Source of the DNA: Octopus bimaculoides
Taxonomy: Eukaryota
Assembly (NCBI RefSeq): GCF_001194135.2
Contig: NC_069002.1
Location: 5,796,612 to 5,844,689 of the forward strand
DNA: 48,078 bases
Reading direction: 5' to 3'
Both the position numbers and the translations under genes were made by a program. Positions 1,922 through 46,066 of the stretch are shown here, piece after piece. Position 1 is the stretch's first letter. Every line of letters starts with the position of its first letter. The notes beneath the pieces were generated by a model. That model did no database searches. It was given only the letters and a program-made list of their open reading frames with translations, and was not told where the DNA came from.

Positions 1922-3201
1922 TTAGGTCGTCAAGTATGAAATTTGTAGAAAAGAAAAACGAGTTGGCTAATGTTTATAAATACGAGGAAGAGTTTTATTC
2001 ATCAAACTATGCACCAATATTGTCAATACACTTTTGCCATTCCAGTGGTAGCTTGTCCACACCGGATCTGTAAAAGCCTGGCAATCTAGAGTCAATAAAA
2101 TCTTAGAAGGCCTGTTTTACAGCATTGTCAGAATTAAATTTTTTCCTATCAAAAAGTTATCCAAATTCTGGAAGAAGTGGTAGTCAGTGGGGACAAGATC
2201 AGATGAGTATGGTGGATGAGGGAGAACTTCCAACTCCAACTCCTGTGGTTTCACCAATGTCATTTCTGCATATGTAGTCTGGCGTTGTCTTGCAATGAAA
2301 TAGGAGTGGATCTGTTGACTAATCTAGGCTGTTTTTTGAAAGTTTCTGCATCATTTGGTCCAGTTGGCTGCAGTATACTTCGGCCGTGATTGATGAGCCA
2401 GGTTTAATGAAATCATAATGGATCGCATTTGCACACGACCACCAAACACACACCATCAGCTTCTTTTGGTGAATTTTGCTTTTTGGACTGTGTTTTGGTG
2501 GCTTGTCTTTGTCCAACCATTGTGCTGAATGTCTACGGTTGTTGTACTGGATCCATTTTTCATCACATGTTACAATTCGATTAAAAAATGATTCATTTTT
2601 GTGACGAGAAAGTAGCATAATGCAGGCTTCCAAACGTTGCTGTTTCTGATTTTCATTGAGTTCATGTGGAACCCACTTATCCAACTTTTTCACTTTACCG
2701 ATTCGAACTAGGTAAGTCAATGTTGTTTGCTTGCTAACACCAAACAACAGCGATAATTGACAGGTACTTTGAGATGGATCTGACTCGACGTTAGCTTTCA
2801 GTTCGTCATCATCCACCTTTGATTCTGGTCGACTGCGTTGCTCAGTTGTGAGGTCAAGGTTACCAGAACGAAATTTTGGAAACCAGTTTGATACTATCTG
2901 CTGTGTAATAACATTAGACTGAAATACTCCATTAATATTCTGAGCTGTCTATGGTGCAGTATTTCCAAGAAAAAACTTATATTTCAGAACTGTACGAACT
3001 TCGGACTTAACCATCTCTAAACAAAAATAGCAAAAACGATTTATAAATACTTTATAAAGTGCAAAATGAATTAGAATAAAGAAATAGATGTGTCACAGCT
3101 TTCTAACAAAGAATAAAGATTGTCTAAGTACAATAATGGCGCAAAATGAGCAGCTGTCAAAGTTTACCATATACCTTACTACAAATTTCATACTTGACGA
3201 C

Positions 3202-21374: not shown

Positions 21375-21562
21375 ATGAAGGGCTGCTGAAAAGTTCCTGA
21401 CATTAAGGGTATTGCGAAAGGCCTGGTCGGAGGCTCAACCTTCCAGGTTCTTTTACAGGGCTTAGAAAAACTGAAGGACCGCTGCAATAAGTGTGTGAAT
21501 CTGAGAGGGGAACCTCCTCTATTTTCATTTACCCAAAACCAGGAACTTTTCATCACCCCTTG

Positions 21563-21564
<2 letters not shown>
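21375..21564 (+). mobile_element. Mariner-derived MITE, copy 2
   Basis: TIRs GAAGGGCTGCTGAAAAGTTCCTG / CAGGAACTTTTCATCACCCCTTGTA. Interior encodes LEKLKDRCNKCVNLRGE. Same family and orientation as 18159-18373. Confidence 0.7.
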
Positions 21565-21602
<38 letters not shown>

Positions 21603-21740
21603 CATACATACATACATATATATACATACATACATATACAAATATATATATAAATACATACACACACACACACACACACAAATATATATATATACATACA
21701 CACACACACATATATACATACATACATACACACACACAAG

Positions 21741-21772
<32 letters not shown>

Positions 21773-21815
21773 CATACATGCATACATACACACATATACA
21801 CACAATTGACTAAAA

Positions 21816-22038
21816 TTATGGAAGGGAAGAATTGCTTATCACTAAATTGGTACCTTCAATTTCTACCAACTCATACACCCATTTACGATTGCAGCGACAC
21901 TCCGTGCCACATTTCTCGGAGCCGCATTTGCGGCATGGAAAATGACAACCAGGGCAGTCCTCATCCAAGCAGTCGCAGACGTCTTTGCTGTTATCAAGAA
22001 GTCGCCCTGCTTCGTCGTACATCTGGTTCTTTTTCACA
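21816..22038 (-). CDS. ARL14EP: ARL14EP-like exon 3 (ARF7EP_C domain)
   Basis: VKKNQMYDEAGRLLDNSKDVCDCLDEDCPGCHFPCRKCGSEKCGTECRCNRKWVYELVEIEG: the characteristic 9-Cys ARF7EP C-terminal motif. Confidence 0.93.
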
Positions 22039-24161
22039 CTGAAAAGAAAGGGGGAAAATAAAAAGAGAAAAAAGTGAGACAAATAAAAACTAGAAACAGA
22101 AATTAAGTCCTCCTTCTCTAGCATATATTAACAGAGACAGAAAACCAGCTCCTCCTCTTTCATCATGGATTGACAGTCAAAAATTAGTTTCTCCTCTTTC
22201 TCTTTCTCTATTATACCATAAGAGAAGCAGAAATAAACACACTACCATTGAACTTATAGTGATTAATTAAAAGTGAAACGAAGATGAAATGATAACGAGA
22301 ACAAATGCTTACTTCTCTCTATATATTCTGCGATTCATCTTGCGCATTTCTCTTGCACTCCGTTCTGGATCAAAATCTTCCATAAATTTACCAGGATTTG
22401 CAAAAGAGAGCATTTTTAGTTGTTTACTAACACTCTGCAAAAGAAAGAAAGAAAAGGAAAACATTGAGAAATAAATAGAGAGACACAAAGATGGATTTCG
22501 CAATGGTTCAGACGAAAAAAAACTATTTGCTACACCAACTCCTTGTACTAGAATGGCATAACTGGCTGAGTAGTCCAAAGTTGTATAGGAATGTCCAATG
22601 GAAAAGCATAGCTATATTTGAATTAGGATCCCGGTTCATTTCGGGTGTCCCCTATAGTATAAATAGAGCGTGGCCGTTGCCAGTACCGCCTGACTGGCCT
22701 TCGTAGGATTTTCGAGTGAGATCGTTGCCAGAGCCCCTGAACTGGCTCCTGTGCGGGTGGCACATAAAATACACCATTTTGAGCGTGGCTGTTGCCAGTA
22801 CCGCCTGACTGGCCTTTGTGCGGGTGACACGTAAAAGCACCCACTACACATTCTGAGTGGTTGGCGTTAGGAAGGGCATCCAGCTGTAGAAACTCTGCCA
22901 AATCAGATTGGAGCCTGGTGTTGCCATCTGGTTTCACCAGTCCTCAGTCAAATCGTCCAACCCATGCTAGCATGGAAAGCAGACGTTAAACGATGATGAT
23001 GATGAACTAAGTGTAGTGTATATTTAAAAAAGATTTTTTTTTTGTACATGAGAATGAAGTTAAACTAGAGGATATAGTGTATAAAGGACTGCTGGAATGT
23101 AACGTAAACAAGTATTAAAGGTGTAGCAATACTTAAAGAGAGAGAGAGAGAAAAAGCTACATGAGATGGAGTTGTGTTTGTGTAAGAATTAATATTCGTT
23201 TGTATGTATTAAGTGTAAGGTAAAAACAAGTAAAAAAAAAAACAGAAAAAAGAAGCCTAGTACTTATTCTAACAGTCTCTTTTTTCAAACCCCTAGTCAC
23301 AGGAATGTAAACAAACCAGCATCGGTCATCAAGTGATAGTGGGGGAGCAAACACAGACACAAATACACACACATAAACGACGGGTTTCTTTCAGTTTCCA
23401 TCTACCAAATCCACTCACAAGGCTTTGATCGGCCGAAGATATAGCAGGAGACACTTGCCCAAGGTGCCACGCAGTGGGACTGAACTCGGAACCATTTGGT
23501 TGGGAAGCAAGCTTCTTACCACACACCCACACCTGTGCTTATAGGGGACGTTAACAATTCAATTAGAAATAATTATGCAATGAAGCCAAAAAAAAAAAGA
23601 TTTTGACTAACATTATTACAACCACTTCAACTAGTATGGGAGACAACTCCATACATGCTTTACCCTTATGACATCATCAGCACTTGCACAACATTTACTA
23701 CATTGCCTCTCCACTTATTGTCTCACCTCTATTATTGCATAAATCAATGTTCCACTCAATTTCCTGTCCTCCCCCCTCTCTCGCTTTCTCTCTTCTTACA
23801 ACTATTCTACCAATCACTCACTTGAACCACTCCGCTTCTCGAAGAACAACGAGAAGCTTGTTCAACAAGGTCGTTTGACCTGCTAGAAGTAGCAATCAAA
23901 TTTCTCTCAAATCACACCATATCACCTTAACAGAAAGGAAGGTTGTAGATAGAATGAAGACCTATGTCTGGAAAAAACACATAGTGATAATAATAAAAGA
24001 TAGAAGTTTATGACAGAGTGTCTTTTATATTAAACTGTAATCGATCGGGGCTGATAGTCTAAACAAATAACAAAATCATAAAACGACACATGAACACATC
24101 ATAAACAAGGGAGATAATTTGGAATTTTCCTAAATATACATACATGAATATGTTTGTATGA

Positions 24162-24210
<49 letters not shown>

Positions 24211-26489
24211 AGAGAGAGACTTGTATTTACAGTAGGAATAAAAGAGTACTCATTACCATAACGATTATTAAATATGAGCAGGTAGATAGGATTTTAAAAT
24301 AATTTTAGTATCAAAATTAGAGAAATATATAAAGTAATTAAATTAGCAACTAGACGCTCTAATTACTTTTATTTTATTTATTTTCATCTTCAACAATTAT
24401 ATTGTTTAGTTGCATTCGCATACTTATTTTGCATTCATTTCCGTTTTTAGTGACTTAAACACATCGTGTTTAAAAAAAAAAAAAAAAAAAAGTGAAAATG
24501 GAATTAAGGGGAAAAATGACAAGATTTAAATTTTTTAAAAAGGGTGTCTAAACGGAAAAAAATTAATTCGAAGAAATATAGCATCCACTAAAGTTCAAAT
24601 CGCTTTTTAACTTTTACTATTATCAGTCATTGGACTGCGGCCCCAGTATTTATTCTGCCAAGCCTGTTACTTATTCTATCGGTGGTTTTTGCTGAATCGC
24701 TGGGTTACAGAGAAAAAAACAAACGAGCACCGGTTGTCAAGCGGTAGTAAGGGTCAAAGGTATACACACACATATATGTAATGTGTGTGTATTAGCTTCC
24801 TACAGTTTCTGTCTACCAAATCCACTCACAAGGTTTTGGTAGGCCCCGAAGCAAGAGTAGTAGTGTTTTAACGTGCCGCGTAGTGTAACTGAACCCGAAA
24901 CCATGTGGTTTGGTAACACGTTTCTTACCACACGACCATGCCTGATAAATAATGTGATAATGCCTCAAGAAGTTACTTCCAAATCGTGTTTCTCGTTTTA
25001 TTGTAAGTCATTATTCATTAATTAACCTTAAAATAATAATAATAAATATTTTATTTATTTGTTGTCATAAGGACGCTGGGTAAAAGAGACATTACAGGAA
25101 AATGAATTAACTTTTATTCGTTCCTATCGTAATATCTAAGTTTCAAAGACTCGGATTTCTAATACCATTTTTTACTCACGCACCACTACCATCACCAATT
25201 TTTTTAATTTTATTTTATTTCATAAATTCTTCATGGAGCTATTTTAAATGACAGCATTTATAGTTAAAGTAAGAAGACTGTTGGAAACTGTGAGAGAAAG
25301 AAAAAGAGAAGGACGAATATAGATAGATAGAGATAGATAGGTAGATAGATAGATAGATAGGTATATAGATAGATAGGTATATAGATAGATAGATAGATAG
25401 ATAGATAGGTATATAGATAGATAGGTAGGTAGGTATATAGATAGACAGATAGGTAGGTATATAGGTATATAGATAGATAGATAGGTATATAGATAGATAG
25501 ATAGATAGGTATATAGATAGATAGATAGATAGGTATATAGATAGATAGATAGATAGATAGGTATATAGATAGATAGGTAGGTAGGTATATAGATAGACAG
25601 ATAGGTAGGTATATAGCTAAATAGATAGATAGGTATATAGATAGATAGATAGGTATATAGATAGATAGATAGATAGATAGATAGGTATATAGATAGATAG
25701 ATAGATAGATAGGTATATAGATAGATAGATAGGTATATAGATAGATAGATAGATAGGTAGGTATATAGATAGATAGATAAATAGGTAGGTATATAGATAG
25801 ATAAGTAGGTATATAGATAGGTAGATATGCTGTAATTTAAGATTATATTCATTAACACGATGAATAAATAAACATACCGCATCTGAGAAATTCCTTCCTA
25901 GGAACCTGGTGAACCAGTTAGCGGTGCCGGCGAAATCCAAAATCTTTTTCTCCTTCGCTATTTCTCTCGCTCTCTCTGTGATCATATCCCGTGTTAATTC
26001 ATCTAGTTTATCGTTAGTATAGAAACTGTTGATCCAGCTGGCAAGTTCCCGGTCCATTTCCCGCACTCTGGTCAGTTGACGGGTTCCACGTCTCTTGGAA
26101 ATGGTCTCGCCCTTGCCAAGGGTTTTACCGTTAGTCTTGGTAGTGGTCGTGGTGGTTTTGGTCGTCCTCGTGTGGGTGGTAGAATTAGAAACATCGTCCG
26201 CGGAATTATCCCGTGTGGTTTTAACAGCAGAACTTTGATTGCTCACGTCGTTAAAGTCGGGGTTAACAGAAGTGAAAGACATGGGCGAAGACACCGAAAG
26301 TTCCAATTCCAATTCGGGTTCGGTTTCCAAATCGGGCGGTTCTTCGGCATCGACATAGTTCGATTTATCCGTCGTCGAATCCACATCTTTGTTGTTACTC
26401 GTTTGGTCTTCGTGTTCGGGTGTTTTGGATGACAGAGAATTGTTCATGGCACCGGTGTTCTTCAGTACCGTCGTCATATCTTTGGACAT
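21816..26489 (-). CDS. ARL14EP: ARL14 effector protein-like (ARF7EP C-terminal Cys-rich domain) with an N-terminal CENP-B/Tc5-type HTH; 3 exons, 318 aa from ATG 26489
   Basis: Exons 25878-26489 (donor GCG|GTATGT, phase 0), 22313-22434 (TTGCAG acceptor, AA|GTAAGC donor, phase 2) and 21816-22038 (TTTCAG acceptor, stop). Total 957 nt = 319 codons, all GT-AG, phases match. Exon 2-3 identity is strong; the exon 1 linkage is inferred from phase and position. Confidence 0.8.
22313..22434 (-). CDS. ARL14EP: ARL14EP-like exon 2
   Basis: SVSKQLKMLSFANPGKFMEDFDPERSAREMRKMNRRIYRE; the QLKxLxFxNPG..DFxPE motif precedes the Cys cluster in this family. Confidence 0.9.
22666..23005 (+). mobile_element. Family C SINE-like repeat ending in (GAT)n, with an internal 35-bp duplication (22666-22700 / 22781-22815, one mismatch)
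   Basis: Core GAGTGGTTGGCGTTAGGAAGGGCATCCAGCTGTAGAAAC...CATGGAAAGCAGACGTTAAACGATGATG; other copies at about 27690-28020, 30640-30790, 32220-32415, 33100-33210 and 38620-38715. Confidence 0.8.
23240..23535 (-). mobile_element. Family B SINE in ARL14EP intron 1
   Basis: Reverse complement of family B head and partial tail. Confidence 0.8.
24620..24945 (-). mobile_element. Diverged family B SINE in ARL14EP intron 1
   Basis: Reverse complement of family B tail and head. Confidence 0.75.
25318..25830. repeat. About 510-bp compound (GATA)/(GGTA)/(TATA) microsatellite next to the exon 1 donor
   Basis: Directly visible. Confidence 0.95.
25878..26489 (-). CDS. Putative exon 1: Ser/Thr/acidic low-complexity region, basic KRRGTR patch, CENP-B-type HTH (about 25890-26060)
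   Basis: Frame open for more than 250 codons. EMDRELASWINSF...LTRDMITERAREIAKEKKILDFAGTANWFTRFLGRN matches the HTH_Tnp_Tc5 pattern. ATG 26489 has A at -3. A canonical GTATGT donor follows the domain directly. Confidence 0.75.
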
Positions 26490-26513
26490 CGTCGGTGCTT
26501 TGATGCTCAAACC

Positions 26514-26548
<35 letters not shown>

Positions 26549-27309
26549 AACTACTGATGTTATTTTTTATTAGTGTTGCTGCTACTGATGACAACACAGC
26601 ATTTACTGTCTTTAATTGATATAAATCCTTTGTTCCACCGTCCTCCTTTCAAAGCGGCACAACTGCTGTCGCCGCCGACAGACGGCGCTCACTGTCATCC
26701 CATTCATTCATCCGTTTTTTTAAATTTTCAAATATCATTTTAATTCATTCCTCTTACTATATATATTTCTGTATGTATATACGTATATGAGAGACAGGCA
26801 GGAGTTCCCTCGGCATCAAGAAATTAAAACAAGCTTTATTAATTATATATTCTGTTTTTTAAAGTAGGGAAAACAAAGTTTCTTTTAACTGGTATGTTTA
26901 CTACAAATGAGATTATTAGAGACGTATGGGAAATGAAGCTGTTTCAAATGAACTGACAAAAAGTTTCTCACAACTCAAAACCTCATAAATCTCTCTTAGA
27001 TCTTTATCTCACTCTCTCTCTCCCTCACTCTATCTGTCTCTTTCTCTCTCCCTCTTTGTCTGCCTGTCTGTCTCTTTTTCTCACTATCACTTTCTCTTTC
27101 CCCCTCTGTCTGTCAGTCTCTCTCTCCTTCTTGCTCTCCCTCTATGTAGCTATCTTTCTCTCTCCCTCTCTGTCGGTCTGTTTCTCTGTCTCTCACTCTC
27201 ACTCTCTCTCTCCACCTCTGTCTGTCTGTCTTTCTCCCTATCTATCTATCTATCTATTTCTTTATCACTCTCTCACTCTCTTTCTCTCCCTATCTCCCCC
27301 ACCCCACCC

Positions 27310-44935: not shown

Positions 44936-45399
44936 CAATGGCTTAGAGCCCACACCGCTACCATCAACCTCTACTCCTGCCGTAGAAAAAGCAGAGGTGA
45001 TTGTGTTCAGATTTGAACTCAGAACACTAAGGTATGAAACTACATGTAATGGAATTTTATATCCCTGCTTGTTGTATCTTTACCCTATAACATTTAAACC
45101 GGCCATACTTAGCCCAAATATTCTACCTGTTTTGACATTCAAACTGGCCACGTGCAGCCTCTCACACCGACCATACTATGCCATTTGAAAAATAGTCACC
45201 TTAGTCTTTACGTTTTGAGTTCAAATCCCATATGACTGTTTCTTTGTATCCTGCAAATTTCTGCCTTTGTGCCAGTGAAAGAAATCGTTATTGTTTATTC
45301 TTTTAAAAATCATTTGTGTTGCACGAAAATGCTTATGATATTTAAATGCAGTACCATTTGAGCCATTATATGTACTATTTACAATTGTTCTTTTTTTTT

Positions 45400-46066
45400 C
45401 CTTTGATTTCATACTTGTCTTTTCGTAGTGGTTGACGAAAACTCTTTGAATATTCTCCTGAAAAATTGGGTTTTTCATTAGTGGTTCGATATCTCTTAAA
45501 TCCAGCACTGGTGGGAACTCTTTAAGTGCCACCTCCACTCCTGGCGGGTCAACGTTATCTCCACACATCTCTTTCAATTTTCTGTAGTTTTCCTCTTCGA
45601 TCAATATTGCCTTCATATCCTCCGCGTAGACGTATGAAGGCACCTTTACTCTTACTATTGAATGTAACTTGATTATTTTTTTCATCAGCCATTCTTCTTT
45701 CAATTCCGATGGCACCTTACCCACTCGCACTTTGGCCACACGTTTGCCGCAGTACGAAGGCAAGAGCACCCATTTGTCTGTTCTTATTGCCTCTGTGGAG
45801 TGCTTTATTGCTTCCTCCTCCGTTGTGAAGCGCACCTCCACAGTGGCATATCTTCACCCTCTCGTAATATATGTTGTGAATCTTTTTATATTCTTAACAC
45901 ATTCTTCTATGGTCTCTATTGGTGCTATTTCTTTCTCGTGGCTGCCTCACTCTCCTTCATCTTTCTAGGCTCCACTTTTATCTCGCGGACTCCCAACTCT
46001 TGCGTGTCTACTCCTTTGCCCGTTGCGGCCGCATAACCTGGGCCTGCCTCCGGCTTCTTCTCCATT
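45400..46066 (-). pseudogene. Probable decayed ORF1 (RRM-like) of an L1/Tx1-type non-LTR retrotransposon
   Basis: N-terminal YAAA motif, then after frameshifts VEVRFTTEEEAIKHS...LLPSYCGKRVAKVRVGKVPSELKEEWL, resembling the VxF...EA...P.Y....V.V..VP pattern of ORF1 proteins. Confidence 0.45.

What the first reader, a model, noticed from the sequence alone, without database searches (positions are those of the whole stretch)
21816..26489. Transposase-type CENP-B HTH spliced in frame onto an ARL14EP (SETDB1-cofactor family) Cys domain
Seen: a stop-free minus-strand exon (25878-26489) ends with EMDRELASWI...MITERAREIAKEKKILDFAGTANWFTRFLGRN. A GTATGT donor follows in phase 0, matching the phase-0 acceptor of ARL14EP exon 2; no DDE catalytic domain follows. 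Established: this pattern is the CENP-B/pogo-Tigger (HTH_Tnp_Tc5) DNA-binding fold. ARL14EP/C11orf46 and C. elegans ARLE-14 associate with the SETDB1/MET-2 H3K9 methyltransferase complex, and I do not know them to carry a DNA-binding domain. Inference: a domesticated transposon DNA-binding module may give an H3K9-methylation cofactor direct sequence targeting, for example to transposon ends. I cannot say whether this architecture is already annotated in molluscs.
Basis: partly seen in the sequence, partly recalled or inferred. Interest (0 to 1): 0.8.

Follow-up and report, generated by a model that had tools for sequence, protein, structure and literature searches.

The report
Octopus SETDB1-cofactor gene with captured transposase HTH
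This is a real, expressed octopus gene, conserved across octopuses and a cuttlefish, that joins a transposase-type DNA-binding helix-turn-helix to the cysteine-rich domain that in humans docks onto the H3K9 methyltransferase SETDB1; databases already list it, but I found no paper that discusses it.

Summary
The minus strand carries a three-exon gene: 26489-25878, 22434-22313 and 22038-21816, encoding 318 aa.

Residues 144-200 are a divergent HTH_Tnp_Tc5 / CENP-B-type helix-turn-helix. Pfam scores it 23.4 bits against a cut-off of 22.2. A profile built from the cephalopod sequences retrieves bona fide Tc5-HTH proteins. CENP-B is the top Foldseek hit, although that match is not significant on its own. 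Residues 208-305 are ARF7EP_C (2e-37), 56% identical to the human C11orf46 domain crystallised with the SETDB2 MBD. The arginine needed for SETDB1 binding in human is conserved.

No DDE domain is present, and intron 1 holds no remnant of one. The fusion exists in two octopod paralogues and in Sepia esculenta. It is under strong purifying selection (omega about 0.1 against O. sinensis; dN 0.13 against Sepia with synonymous sites saturated).

The architecture is not unannotated. The exact product is XP_014786357.1 (O. bimaculoides), which UniProt names "HTH CENPB-type domain-containing protein". A DNA-binding N-terminus on ARL14EP is also not unique: scallop, oyster and a catfish carry THAP+ARF7EP_C, and in scallop the THAP exon is spliced at the homologous acceptor. 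DNA-targeted SETDB1 recruitment remains an inference.

The parts
25878..26489 (-). Coding exon 1 (aa 1-204). It encodes an acidic, T/S-rich, poorly conserved N-terminal region (aa 1-~128), a basic linker (KRRGTRQLTRVRE) and the HTH.
   Evidence: Stop-free 612 nt from the first ATG. Covered by RNA reads and contigs. 92% nt identity to O. sinensis exon 1. omega is 0.23 for aa 1-128.
25890..26060 (-). HTH_Tnp_Tc5 / CENP-B-type helix-turn-helix (aa 144-200). The putative recognition helix is FAGTANWFTRFLGRN.
   Evidence: Pfam PF03221 scores 23.4 bits against a gathering cut-off of 22.2. The cephalopod HTH profile finds Tc5-HTH proteins at E 8e-12 to 8.5e-4 among 1.84 billion representatives. The AF2 model shows a three-helix bundle with pLDDT 84-91, and CENP-B 1HLV is the best PDB fold hit, although its E-value is about 1. 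omega is 0.095.
25876..25877 (-). GT of the intron 1 donor (GCG|GTATGT), phase 0.
   Evidence: Sequence. The junction is seen in RNA.
22435..25877 (-). Intron 1 (3443 nt). It starts with a long (GATA)n-type microsatellite and holds no transposase remnant.
   Evidence: The three sense-strand frames give no Pfam hit at E<=0.1. The ORF list shows only low-complexity ORFs.
22313..22434 (-). Coding exon 2 (aa 205-245, first two bases of codon 245). This is the conserved KQLKMLSFANPGKFMEDFDPERSAREMRKMNRRIYRE segment of ARF7EP_C.
   Evidence: Sequence. RNA coverage and joints. 97.5% nt identity to O. sinensis.
22039..22312 (-). Intron 2 (274 nt, GT..AG).
   Evidence: The joint 22038/22313 skips 274 nt with CT..AC on the plus strand, in reads and contigs.
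21816..22038 (-). Coding exon 3 (aa 245-318 plus TAA). This is the cysteine-rich domain CDCLDEDCPGCHFPCRKCGSEKCGTECRCNRKW.
   Evidence: Pfam ARF7EP_C 2.2e-37. phmmer hits PDB 8hfp_A (human ARL14EP CRD) at 5.1e-24. There are 17 synonymous and 0 non-synonymous differences from O. sinensis across exons 2 and 3.
21894..21896 (-). Codon for R293. It aligns with human C11orf46 R236, whose R236H substitution abolishes SETDB1 binding.
   Evidence: Ungapped phmmer alignment to 8hfp_A. The column is invariant in alignments A2 and A3. The R236H result is from PMC6739341. The residue numbering is my own count from the C-terminus.

Best explanation
This is a bona fide host-transposase fusion gene, most likely O. 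bimaculoides LOC106880776. A first exon encodes a single Tc5/pogo/CENP-B-type helix-turn-helix with no first (psq-type) HTH and no DDE catalytic domain. It is spliced in phase 0 onto the two conserved exons of an ARL14EP-family gene, which encode the cysteine-rich ARF7EP_C domain.

Shown: the exon structure, the splicing and the expression; the domain identities; the presence of the fusion in two octopod paralogues and in the cuttlefish Sepia esculenta, which places its origin before the octopod/decapodiform split; and strong purifying selection on the HTH.

Inferred mechanism: the C-terminal domain docks onto cephalopod SETDB1, while the N-terminal HTH, preceded by a basic arm, tethers the complex to DNA. 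The protein would then act as a one-piece adaptor between a DNA sequence and an H3K9 methyltransferase, functionally analogous to the vertebrate DBD-KRAB/KAP1/SETDB1 route.

Scallop has a THAP-encoding first exon at the homologous acceptor, and oyster and catfish also have THAP+ARF7EP_C proteins. This suggests that the ARL14EP core repeatedly acquires transposase-derived DNA-binding first exons.

I put the gene and its architecture at about 0.95 and the DNA-targeted SETDB1-recruitment mechanism at about 0.45. The figure given is a blend.
For: Splicing and expression. Domains: (ARF7EP_C 128 bits; HTH_Tnp_Tc5 23.4 bits against 22.2). The HTH profile retrieves only the cephalopod ARL14EP paralogues and then proteins that Pfam scores as HTH_Tnp_Tc5 at 33-251 bits. 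AF2 gives a three-helix fold, and 1HLV (CENP-B bound to DNA) is the best PDB fold match for the HTH-only model and the second-best for the longer model.

Cysteine-rich domain: 8hfp_A (C11orf46 CRD in complex with the SETDB2 MBD) at 5.1e-24 with 56% identity, and the R236 equivalent is conserved.

Conservation: the O. sinensis orthologue is 93% identical. omega is 0.095 for the HTH and 0 for exons 2-3. The Sepia esculenta transcript has HTH dN 0.134 with synonymous sites saturated. Paralogue B in O. vulgaris, O. sinensis, O. bimaculoides and Argonauta has the same three-exon structure and intron position. In the five-sequence HTH alignment, 41 of 78-80 positions are invariant, while the upstream N-terminal sequence is unalignable between octopus and Sepia.

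Parallel THAP fusions. Literature on ARL14EP-SETDB1: PMC6105299, PMC6739341, PMC13108219 citing Mahana et al. 2024. Transposase capture as a general route: bioRxiv 10.1101/2020.05.07.082677.
Against: The Pfam HTH hit is borderline. The orthologues in O. sinensis (20.5 bits), paralogue B (18.6) and Argonauta (18.7) fall below the cut-off. A sequence-profile search of the PDB found no HTH, and the Foldseek E-values for CENP-B are about 1.

CENP-B and pogo transposases bind DNA with two HTH motifs. Only the second is present here, so affinity or specificity may be low, or the domain may have changed role. Its net charge is only +4. No donor transposon family was identified; the nearest non-ARL14EP relatives are multi-HTH proteins from various animals.

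Nothing here tests DNA binding, binding to cephalopod SETDB1, nuclear localisation or any effect on H3K9me. The AF2 confidence for the Cys domain is low (pLDDT 50-60).
Confidence: 0.55

Rival explanations
1. The fusion gene is real, but the lone HTH no longer reads DNA sequence. It would serve instead as a protein-protein, histone-binding or RNA-binding module, taking the place of the non-CRD part of human C11orf46 that binds histone H3, or simply as a structural or NLS-bearing N-terminus.
For: Only one of the two HTH motifs of the CENP-B/pogo DNA-binding unit is present. The domain is divergent, with a borderline Pfam score. Human C11orf46 contacts histone H3 through a region outside the CRD (PMC6739341; PMC13108219). 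Net charge is modest at +4.
Against: The most conserved stretch is the predicted third (recognition) helix and the basic arm: KKILDF.GT.NW.TRFL.RNFS and RQLT.V.EMD are invariant in five sequences. That is where Tc5-type HTH domains carry their signature. THAP, a dedicated DNA-binding zinc finger, occupies the same position in bivalves, which argues that the slot is used for DNA binding.
Confidence: 0.25
2. The HTH exon was not captured from a mobile element. It would have been shuffled from an already domesticated host CENPB-type or multi-HTH gene, so the term 'domesticated transposon module' would apply only at second hand.
For: The nearest relatives outside the ARL14EP paralogues are long multi-HTH proteins without a DDE, from an oyster, Lottia, a fish and unnamed samples (P0039, P0040, P0042-P0044, P0046), rather than intact pogo transposases. 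Intron 1 holds no transposase remnant.
Against: After more than 250 My (by outside estimates) any remnant would have decayed, so its absence says little. One hit (P0049, a snake protein) has the psq + Tc5-HTH layout typical of pogo transposase N-termini. The domain family as a whole is transposase-derived (established knowledge; Pfam PF03221).
Confidence: 0.3
3. The protein acts like the originally described ARF7EP/ARL14EP, as a cytoplasmic effector of the ARL14 GTPase in vesicle traffic, and the HTH is irrelevant to chromatin.
For: According to PMC6105299, the only vertebrate function published before 2018 was cytoplasmic. Nothing here tests localisation.
Against: A conserved nucleic-acid-binding fold preceded by a KRR-rich arm fits a nuclear role better. 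The CRD residues that contact the SETDB MBD in 8HFP are highly conserved, including the R236 equivalent. The nematode and human proteins are nuclear SETDB1 partners.
Confidence: 0.08
4. The fusion is an artefact: read-through between neighbouring genes, a mis-assembly, or an over-extended gene model.
For: The window has many N gaps (4585 N). Intron sizes differ greatly from O. sinensis.
Against: Spliced RNA contigs from independent studies and raw reads span both junctions. The same open reading frame and the same intron positions occur in O. sinensis, O. vulgaris, Argonauta, paralogue B and Sepia transcripts.
Confidence: 0.02

Closest known systems
Host-transposase fusion genes formed by transposase capture (Cosby et al., bioRxiv 10.1101/2020.05.07.082677; e.g. 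KRAB-transposase fusions such as KRABINER)
   Same: A transposase DNA-binding domain without the catalytic domain is joined by splicing to a host effector domain. The fusion is conserved under purifying selection. The effector side plausibly recruits the SETDB1 silencing machinery.
   Different: The host partner is ARL14EP's cysteine-rich domain, which in human binds the SETDB1/2 MBD directly, rather than KRAB/KAP1. The lineage is coleoid cephalopods, not tetrapods. No donor element was identified. ARL14EP does not occur in that preprint (0 occurrences).
Human ARL14EP / C11orf46 and C. elegans ARLE-14
   Same: The C-terminal ARF7EP_C cysteine-rich domain is shared: 56% identical to the crystallised human CRD, all Cys/His ligand positions conserved, R236 equivalent conserved. 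The expected partner is SETDB1/MET-2.
   Different: The N-terminal half is unrelated. Human C11orf46 uses a non-CRD region to bind histone H3 (PMC6739341), whereas the octopus protein has a Tc5-type HTH. Most family members are short proteins of 100-200 aa in which ARF7EP_C is the only listed Pfam domain.
CENP-B / pogo-Tigger-Tc5 transposase DNA-binding region (PDB 1HLV; Pfam CENP-B_N + HTH_Tnp_Tc5)
   Same: The second HTH (HTH_Tnp_Tc5) is recognisable by profile and predicted fold. The signature F-x-(A/G)-(S/T)-x-x-W-x-x-R-F helix is retained.
   Different: There is no first HTH (CENP-B_N/psq), no DDE_1 domain and no CENP-B dimerisation domain. The Pfam score sits just at threshold.
THAP-ARF7EP_C proteins of bivalves and a catfish (Mizuhopecten XP isoform X1 = P0005, Crassostrea virginica isoform X3 = P0008, Clarias gariepinus P0034)
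   Same: A transposase-derived DNA-binding domain sits N-terminal to the same ARL14EP core. In Mizuhopecten it is a single first exon spliced in phase 0 at the homologous acceptor...GYE|TVTKQLRML against octopus ...FSDA|SVSKQLKML.
   Different: The DNA-binding fold differs (a THAP zinc finger of P-element origin rather than an HTH). These are independent acquisitions. They are gene-model isoforms whose expression was not checked here, apart from one 1146-nt contig (P0018) that encodes the whole 252-aa fusion.

Membership tests
HTH_Tnp_Tc5 / HTH CENPB-type domain (Pfam PF03221; PROSITE-type 'HTH CENPB-type') | Match to the family profile at or above the curated threshold | tested here: met
   23.4 bits against a gathering cut-off of 22.2, aa 144-200, profile positions 3-60 of 66. 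The Sepia orthologue scores 25.7 bits. O. sinensis (20.5), paralogue B (18.6) and Argonauta (18.7) are below threshold. UniProt names the exact protein 'HTH CENPB-type domain-containing protein'.
HTH_Tnp_Tc5 / HTH CENPB-type domain | A reciprocal search from the candidate retrieves accepted family members | tested here: met
   The profile of 5 cephalopod HTHs against 1.84 billion representatives gave 15 hits. Of the non-ARL14EP hits, P0039, P0040 and P0047-P0051 were scanned and score 33-251 bits on PF03221. P0041 and P0045 were also scanned and show no PF03221 hit; they look like helical or low-complexity matches. P0042, P0043, P0044 and P0046 were not scanned, though their sequences show the F.(A/G)S..W..(R/F) signature.
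HTH_Tnp_Tc5 / HTH CENPB-type domain | Three-helix HTH fold like CENP-B domain 2 | tested here: inconclusive
   AF2 predicts three helices with pLDDT 84-91. 1hlv_A is the top PDB hit for the HTH-only model (prob 0.72, TMq 0.46, rmsd 3.5 A over 55 columns), but its E-value is 1.1. It ranks second at E 0.83 for the longer model.
HTH_Tnp_Tc5 / HTH CENPB-type domain | Binds DNA | not testable with these tools
   Needs EMSA, DAP-seq or PBM.
CENP-B / pogo-type bipartite DNA-binding region | An N-terminal psq/CENP-B_N HTH preceding the Tc5 HTH | tested here: not met
   No CENP-B_N, HTH_psq or BrkDBD hit even at E<=10. The upstream 130 aa are low-complexity and unalignable between octopus and Sepia.
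Autonomous pogo/Tigger/Tc5 transposase | A DDE_1 catalytic domain downstream of the HTH | tested here: not met
   Absent from the 318-aa product and from the sense frames of intron 1. The mRNA splices directly to the ARL14EP exons.
ARL14EP / ARF7EP_C family (Pfam PF14949) | Profile match above threshold, with the conserved Cys/His pattern CDCL-x3-C-x-GC-x2-PC-x2-C-x3-KCG-x2-CR | tested here: met
   128.3 bits against a cut-off of 27. All invariant columns of alignments A2 and A3 are present. 8hfp_A scores 5.1e-24.
ARL14EP / ARF7EP_C family | Residue required for SETDB1 binding (human R236) | tested here: met
   Window R293 aligns with it without gaps, and the column is invariant. The R236H effect is from PMC6739341.
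ARL14EP / ARF7EP_C family | Physical binding to the SETDB1/SETDB2 MBD | not testable with these tools
   Known for human (PDB 8HFP; Mahana et al. 2024, as cited in PMC13108219) and for C. elegans MET-2 (PMC6105299). Not tested for cephalopods. I did not check the octopus SETDB1 MBD.
Host-transposase fusion gene (transposase capture) | In-frame spliced transcript joining a transposase-derived domain to a host domain | tested here: met
   RNA contigs and reads. Sepia transcripts.
Host-transposase fusion gene (transposase capture) | Orthologues in several species and purifying selection on the captured domain | tested here: met
   O. sinensis, O. vulgaris, Argonauta and Sepia. omega is 0.095 (8 synonymous and 3 non-synonymous differences). 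dN is 0.134 against Sepia with pS about 1.
Host-transposase fusion gene (transposase capture) | An identifiable donor transposon family | tested here: inconclusive
   No close transposase relative was found. The nearest hits are multi-HTH proteins and one snake pogo-like N-terminus. Cephalopod repeat libraries were not available.

The most novel reading that the evidence does not exclude
The ARL14EP core (the SETDB1-MBD-binding cysteine-rich domain) is a recurrent landing pad for transposase-derived DNA-binding first exons: a Tc5/pogo HTH in coleoid cephalopods, and THAP in bivalves and in at least one fish. This would create single-polypeptide, sequence-specific recruiters of SETDB1. They would act as an invertebrate counterpart of the KRAB-ZFP/KAP1 system and might target the transposon families from which their DNA-binding domains came.
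Probability: 0.3. Interest if true: 0.75.

Novelty: new member of a known kind. Interest (0 to 1): 0.5.

Why it matters
How SETDB1 is brought to specific DNA outside vertebrates is poorly understood, because invertebrates lack KRAB-ZFP/KAP1. ARL14EP/ARLE-14 is known to help SETDB1/MET-2 associate with chromatin, but how it recognises chromatin is unclear. A version of this cofactor that carries a transposase-type DNA-binding domain, has been conserved since before octopuses and cuttlefish diverged, and was duplicated in octopods gives a concrete, testable candidate for direct DNA-guided H3K9 methylation in cephalopods. The parallel THAP fusions at the same splice acceptor suggest a general evolutionary route. 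The tests are simple: binding assays, co-IP and CUT&Tag. The finding is nonetheless an architecture already present in RefSeq and UniProt, and its function is wholly inferred.

Tried and rejected
- **Phage tblastn.** A tblastn of exon 1 against the phage collection found nothing. It was irrelevant for a eukaryotic window and a wasted call.
- **Laying reads across the whole locus.** I worked around this by laying reads on exon 1 and on exons 2-3 separately, then linking them through the same contig records and the loose-end sequence.
- **PDB sequence-profile search with the HTH alignment.** It returned only chance helical matches and not CENP-B. Sequence alone therefore does not link the domain to a solved structure.
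- **Pfam on DNA references of the intron.** This failed because of stop codons. I repeated it with the stops masked, for the three sense frames only, and found no domain. The antisense frames were translated but not scanned.
- **Foldseek.** CENP-B ranks first (HTH-only model) and second (longer model), but at non-significant E-values. I treat this as consistent with the HTH assignment, not as proof.
- **Architecture survey of the ARF7EP_C family.** The search lists only the best 120 of 806 hits, all with ARF7EP_C as the only listed Pfam domain. The frequency of THAP, HTH or other N-terminal domains across the family could not be quantified.
- **Cryptic first HTH.** I considered and rejected a hidden psq/CENP-B_N motif in aa 1-130. 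There is no profile hit even at E<=10, and that region is not conserved between octopus and Sepia.
- **Human N-terminus.** I did not test whether the human ARL14EP N-terminus is itself a degenerate DNA-binding domain, because I had no tool-derived human full-length sequence.

Full report
**1. What is in the sequence**

On the minus strand there is a three-exon coding gene.
- Exon 1 is 26489..25878 (612 nt). It starts at the first ATG of a longer stop-free frame and ends ...TCA GAT GCG|GTATGT.
- Exon 2 is 22434..22313 (122 nt). Its acceptor is ttttgcag|AGTGTT and its donor is AGAGAA|GTAAGC.
- Exon 3 is 22038..21816 (223 nt, ending in TAA).

Exon 1 ends in phase 0 and exon 2 begins in phase 0. 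The joined CDS is 957 nt and encodes 318 aa.

**2. Is the splice real?**

Yes. Eighteen runs from one organism hold exon 1 as near-identical sequence.

The same assembled RNA contig of run X1 (1021 nt) maps as follows:
- record positions 6-238 on 21806-22038 (exon 3),
- 239-361 on 22313-22435 (exon 2),
- 361-998 on 25878-26515 (exon 1).

A 1025-nt contig of run X5, from a different study, does the same. Three raw RNA-seq reads of X19 stop matching at 22435. They continue with GCATCTGAGAAATTCCTTCCTAGGAACCTG, which is the reverse complement of the last 30 nt of exon 1. The exon 2/exon 3 joint skips 274 nt with GT..AG on the minus strand. No loose end pointing to another first exon was reported.

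**3. Domain identities**

Pfam gives ARF7EP_C at 2.2e-37 (128 bits, aa 208-305). It gives HTH_Tnp_Tc5 at 5.7e-5, 23.4 bits against a curated cut-off of 22.2, covering aa 144-200 and profile positions 3-60 of 66. Because that is borderline, I tested it three further ways.

(a) I built a profile from the HTH segment of five cephalopod sequences (A1) and searched 1.84 billion representative proteins. It found 15 proteins. After the ARL14EP paralogues themselves came P0039, P0040 and P0042-P0051 at E values from 3.5e-26 to 8.5e-4. Of these, P0039, P0040 and P0047-P0051 were scanned and score 33-251 bits on PF03221, often next to BrkDBD or CENP-B_N motifs. P0041 and P0045 were also scanned and show no PF03221 hit; they look like helical or low-complexity matches. 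P0042-P0044 and P0046 were not scanned, but their sequences carry the F-x-(A/G)-S-x-x-W-x-x-(R/F) signature.

(b) AlphaFold2 predicts a confident three-helix bundle for this segment: pLDDT 84-88 within the longer model and 85-91 in the HTH-only model.

(c) Foldseek against the PDB ranks CENP-B(1-129) bound to DNA (1hlv_A) first for the HTH-only model (prob 0.72, TMq 0.46, rmsd 3.5 A over 55 columns, 24% identity, E 1.1). It ranks second for the longer model (E 0.83). Those E-values are not significant alone, and a pure sequence-profile search of the PDB found nothing.

Taken together, the segment is a divergent but genuine member of the Tc5/pogo/CENP-B second-HTH family.

Two features are missing.
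- **First HTH (psq/CENP-B_N).** There is no hit even at E<=10. The preceding 130 aa are acidic/T-rich (net charge -10) and unalignable between octopus and cuttlefish.
- **DDE domain.** The product has none, and the three sense frames of intron 1 give no Pfam hit.

**4. The ARL14EP half**

The best PDB fold hit of the longer model is 8hfp_A, [quoted passage not shown] (E 7e-4, 56% identity). phmmer gives 5.1e-24 with an ungapped alignment.

The review PMC13108219 summarises Mahana et al. 2024. The SETDB1/2 MBD is non-canonical, does not bind methyl-DNA, and instead binds the C11orf46 CRD. A different part of C11orf46 binds histone H3. PMC6739341 shows that R236H abolishes the C11orf46-SETDB1 interaction while H3 binding persists. 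By my count from the alignment, human R236 corresponds to window R293 (codon 21896-21894), and this column is invariant across the family alignments. PMC6105299 shows that ARLE-14 binds MET-2 and is needed for robust MET-2 association with chromatin.

**5. Whose gene is it, and is it annotated?**

The exact 318-aa sequence is XP_014786357.1, "uncharacterized protein LOC106880776 [Octopus bimaculoides]". The UniRef entry A0A0L8FW35 is named "HTH CENPB-type domain-containing protein". The window is therefore most likely O. bimaculoides. The gene model and the HTH call already exist as automatic annotation.

Orthologues:
- O. sinensis XP_029649710.1 (93% identical, full length),
- O. vulgaris CAI9738984.1.

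A second paralogue (B) also carries the HTH and is also auto-named HTH CENPB-type for O. bimaculoides. It is represented by O. bimaculoides XP_014786963.1 "ARL14 effector protein isoform X1", by O. vulgaris and O. sinensis P0003, and by Argonauta hians P0004. A third octopus paralogue (P0030) has only the Cys domain.

In the searchable literature I found no paper that connects ARL14EP with an HTH, CENPB, THAP or transposase capture.
- ARL14EP has 0 occurrences in the Cosby et al. preprint.
- ARL14 and ARF7EP have 0 occurrences in the metazoan TE-derived transcription-factor survey PMC10027918, which does count 7 CENPB genes in Octopus.
- The ARL14EP+THAP and ARF7EP/CG14464 searches gave nothing relevant.

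**6. Age and constraint**

P0002 (297 aa) has the same HTH+ARF7EP_C layout and scores 25.7 bits on Pfam HTH. It is encoded on about 117 RNA-assembly contigs. Two of the runs (SRR19578108, SRR31864757) are listed as Sepia esculenta transcriptomes in PMC11917092. The fusion therefore predates the octopod/decapodiform split; a date of more than roughly 250 My is outside knowledge that I did not test.

Paralogue B in O. vulgaris has the same three-exon structure, with the intron at the same place...NFSET|GTAAGT, then ...tag|DVGKHLKML. The duplication therefore followed the fusion.

| Comparison | Region | Result |
|---|---|---|
| vs O. sinensis (locus L001) | N-terminal aa 1-128 | omega 0.23 |
| vs O. 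sinensis | HTH aa 129-204 | omega 0.095 (8 syn, 3 non-syn) |
| vs O. sinensis | exons 2-3 | omega 0 (17 syn, 0 non-syn) |
| vs Sepia | HTH | pS about 1 (saturated), dN 0.134 |
| vs Sepia | exons 2-3 | dN 0.060 |

Across the five sequences, 41 of about 78 HTH positions are invariant. They are concentrated in the basic arm/helix 1 (RQLT.V.EMD.EL..WIN) and in helix 3 (KKILDF.GT.NW.TRFL.RNFS). The counts are small, but the picture is consistent: the HTH is a constrained, functional domain.

**7. A wider pattern: THAP at the same slot**

The first homology search showed THAP (PF05485) + ARF7EP_C in Mizuhopecten yessoensis isoform X1, Crassostrea virginica isoform X3, an unnamed 1146-nt contig (P0018) and the catfish Clarias gariepinus. 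Pfam confirms THAP above threshold in all four, at 28-59 bits against a cut-off of 23.9.

In the Mizuhopecten genome, THAP is a single first exon (aa 1-110...GAG|GTAATT). It is spliced in phase 0 to an exon beginning TVTKQLRML, the position homologous to the octopus acceptor (SVSKQLKML). This is followed by the same third exon. The catfish model has more exons.

All 120 ARL14EP family members listed by the family-wide search (the best of 806 hits) are 100-200 aa proteins with ARF7EP_C as the only listed Pfam domain. The parallel THAP fusions make the DNA-tethering reading more plausible and the octopus case less unique. I did not verify expression of the THAP isoforms, other than noting that P0018 sits on a contig too short to contain introns of the size seen in scallop.

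**8. Most likely mechanism**

Shown: a conserved, expressed protein with an N-terminal Tc5-type HTH and a C-terminal SETDB-MBD-binding-type cysteine-rich domain.

Inferred: the C-terminus docks onto cephalopod SETDB1, and the HTH with its basic arm contacts DNA. The protein would then link a DNA site to H3K9 methylation. This is analogous in logic to DBD-KRAB/KAP1/SETDB1 in vertebrates and to KRAB-transposase fusions (10.1101/2020.05.07.082677). In this reading the HTH would take the place of the H3-binding N-terminal part of the human protein.

Caveats:
- CENP-B and pogo transposases use two HTH motifs, and only one is present here.
- The net charge is only +4.
- No donor transposon was found.
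- Whether the targets are transposon ends is pure conjecture.

I put the architecture at about 0.95 and the DNA-guided SETDB1-recruitment mechanism at about 0.45. The main rival is that the HTH has become a protein- or histone-binding module (about 0.25). On origin, direct capture from a transposon and shuffling from an already domesticated multi-HTH host gene cannot be told apart with the present data. An artefact is excluded by the RNA evidence.

**9. Verdict**

This is a new member of a known kind (host-transposase fusion genes) with a noteworthy partner. It is already machine-annotated, but as far as I could find it is undescribed in the literature. Interest is moderate (0.5). It would rise if DNA binding and the SETDB1 interaction were shown, or if recurrent capture of transposase DNA-binding domains by ARL14EP were established across phyla.

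Noticed in passing
window 2319-2816 (-): A 165-aa ORF is a mariner-type transposase fragment (Pfam Transposase_1, 2.6e-25, partial DDE). It is a decayed mariner-like element unrelated to the HTH-ARL14EP gene.
   Followed up: partly
window 22039-22312 and 22435-25877; L001 10610-17831 and 17954-22413: Intron sizes differ strongly between species. Intron 1 is 3.4 kb here against 7.2 kb in O. sinensis, and intron 2 is 274 nt against about 4.5 kb. I did not check whether this reflects TE insertions in O. sinensis or gaps or collapse in this assembly.
   Followed up: no
window 25244-25877, 26520-26560, ~21500-21805: Microsatellites sit tightly around the coding exons. A (GATA)n-like tract of about 600 nt starts within about 50 nt of the exon 1 donor. 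An (AAT)n run lies about 30 nt upstream of the ATG. (TG)n/(TA)n tracts follow shortly after the stop codon. The RNA contigs end in the upstream and downstream tracts, so the UTRs are not defined.
   Followed up: no
L014 3297-3626, 7813-7932, 9625-9867 (Mizuhopecten yessoensis): Scallop ARL14EP isoform X1 has a THAP-encoding first exon spliced in phase 0 at the acceptor homologous to the octopus one. Oyster (P0008), an unnamed contig (P0018) and a catfish (P0034, L015) also have THAP+ARF7EP_C.
   Followed up: partly
proteins P0039, P0040, P0042-P0044, P0046 (hits): These are large DDE-less proteins carrying repeated HTH modules. P0039 (2283 aa) has about 8-9 BrkDBD/psq + HTH_Tnp_Tc5 modules, and P0040 has three HTH_Tnp_Tc5 stretches plus one BrkDBD. 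P0042-P0044 and P0046 were not scanned, but their sequences show repeated Tc5-type HTH motifs, and they come from Lottia, an unnamed sample, an oyster and a fish. This looks like an undescribed class of multi-HTH proteins.
   Followed up: no
proteins P0031 and P0012: These are other odd ARF7EP_C architectures. P0031 is a 516-aa MetaClust protein with ERAP1_C + ARF7EP_C. The Littorina saxatilis protein P0012 has a second, partial Cys-rich repeat at its C-terminus. Either could be a real fusion or a gene-model error.
   Followed up: no
window 45221-45841 (-): A 206-aa ORF (MEVRFTTEEEAIKHSTEAIR...) has no Pfam hit. Its nature is unknown.
   Followed up: partly
protein P0038: This is a 191-aa product from a 3.3-kb Logan contig. 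It is the paralogue B HTH exon read through the donor into intron sequence (...NFSET|VSIIFLDCF...), that is, an unspliced or genomic copy rather than a distinct isoform.
   Followed up: no
window, whole: The window contains 4585 N in many gaps and has low GC (21-43%), consistent with a draft scaffold. ORF lists are dominated by gap and microsatellite artefacts.
   Followed up: no
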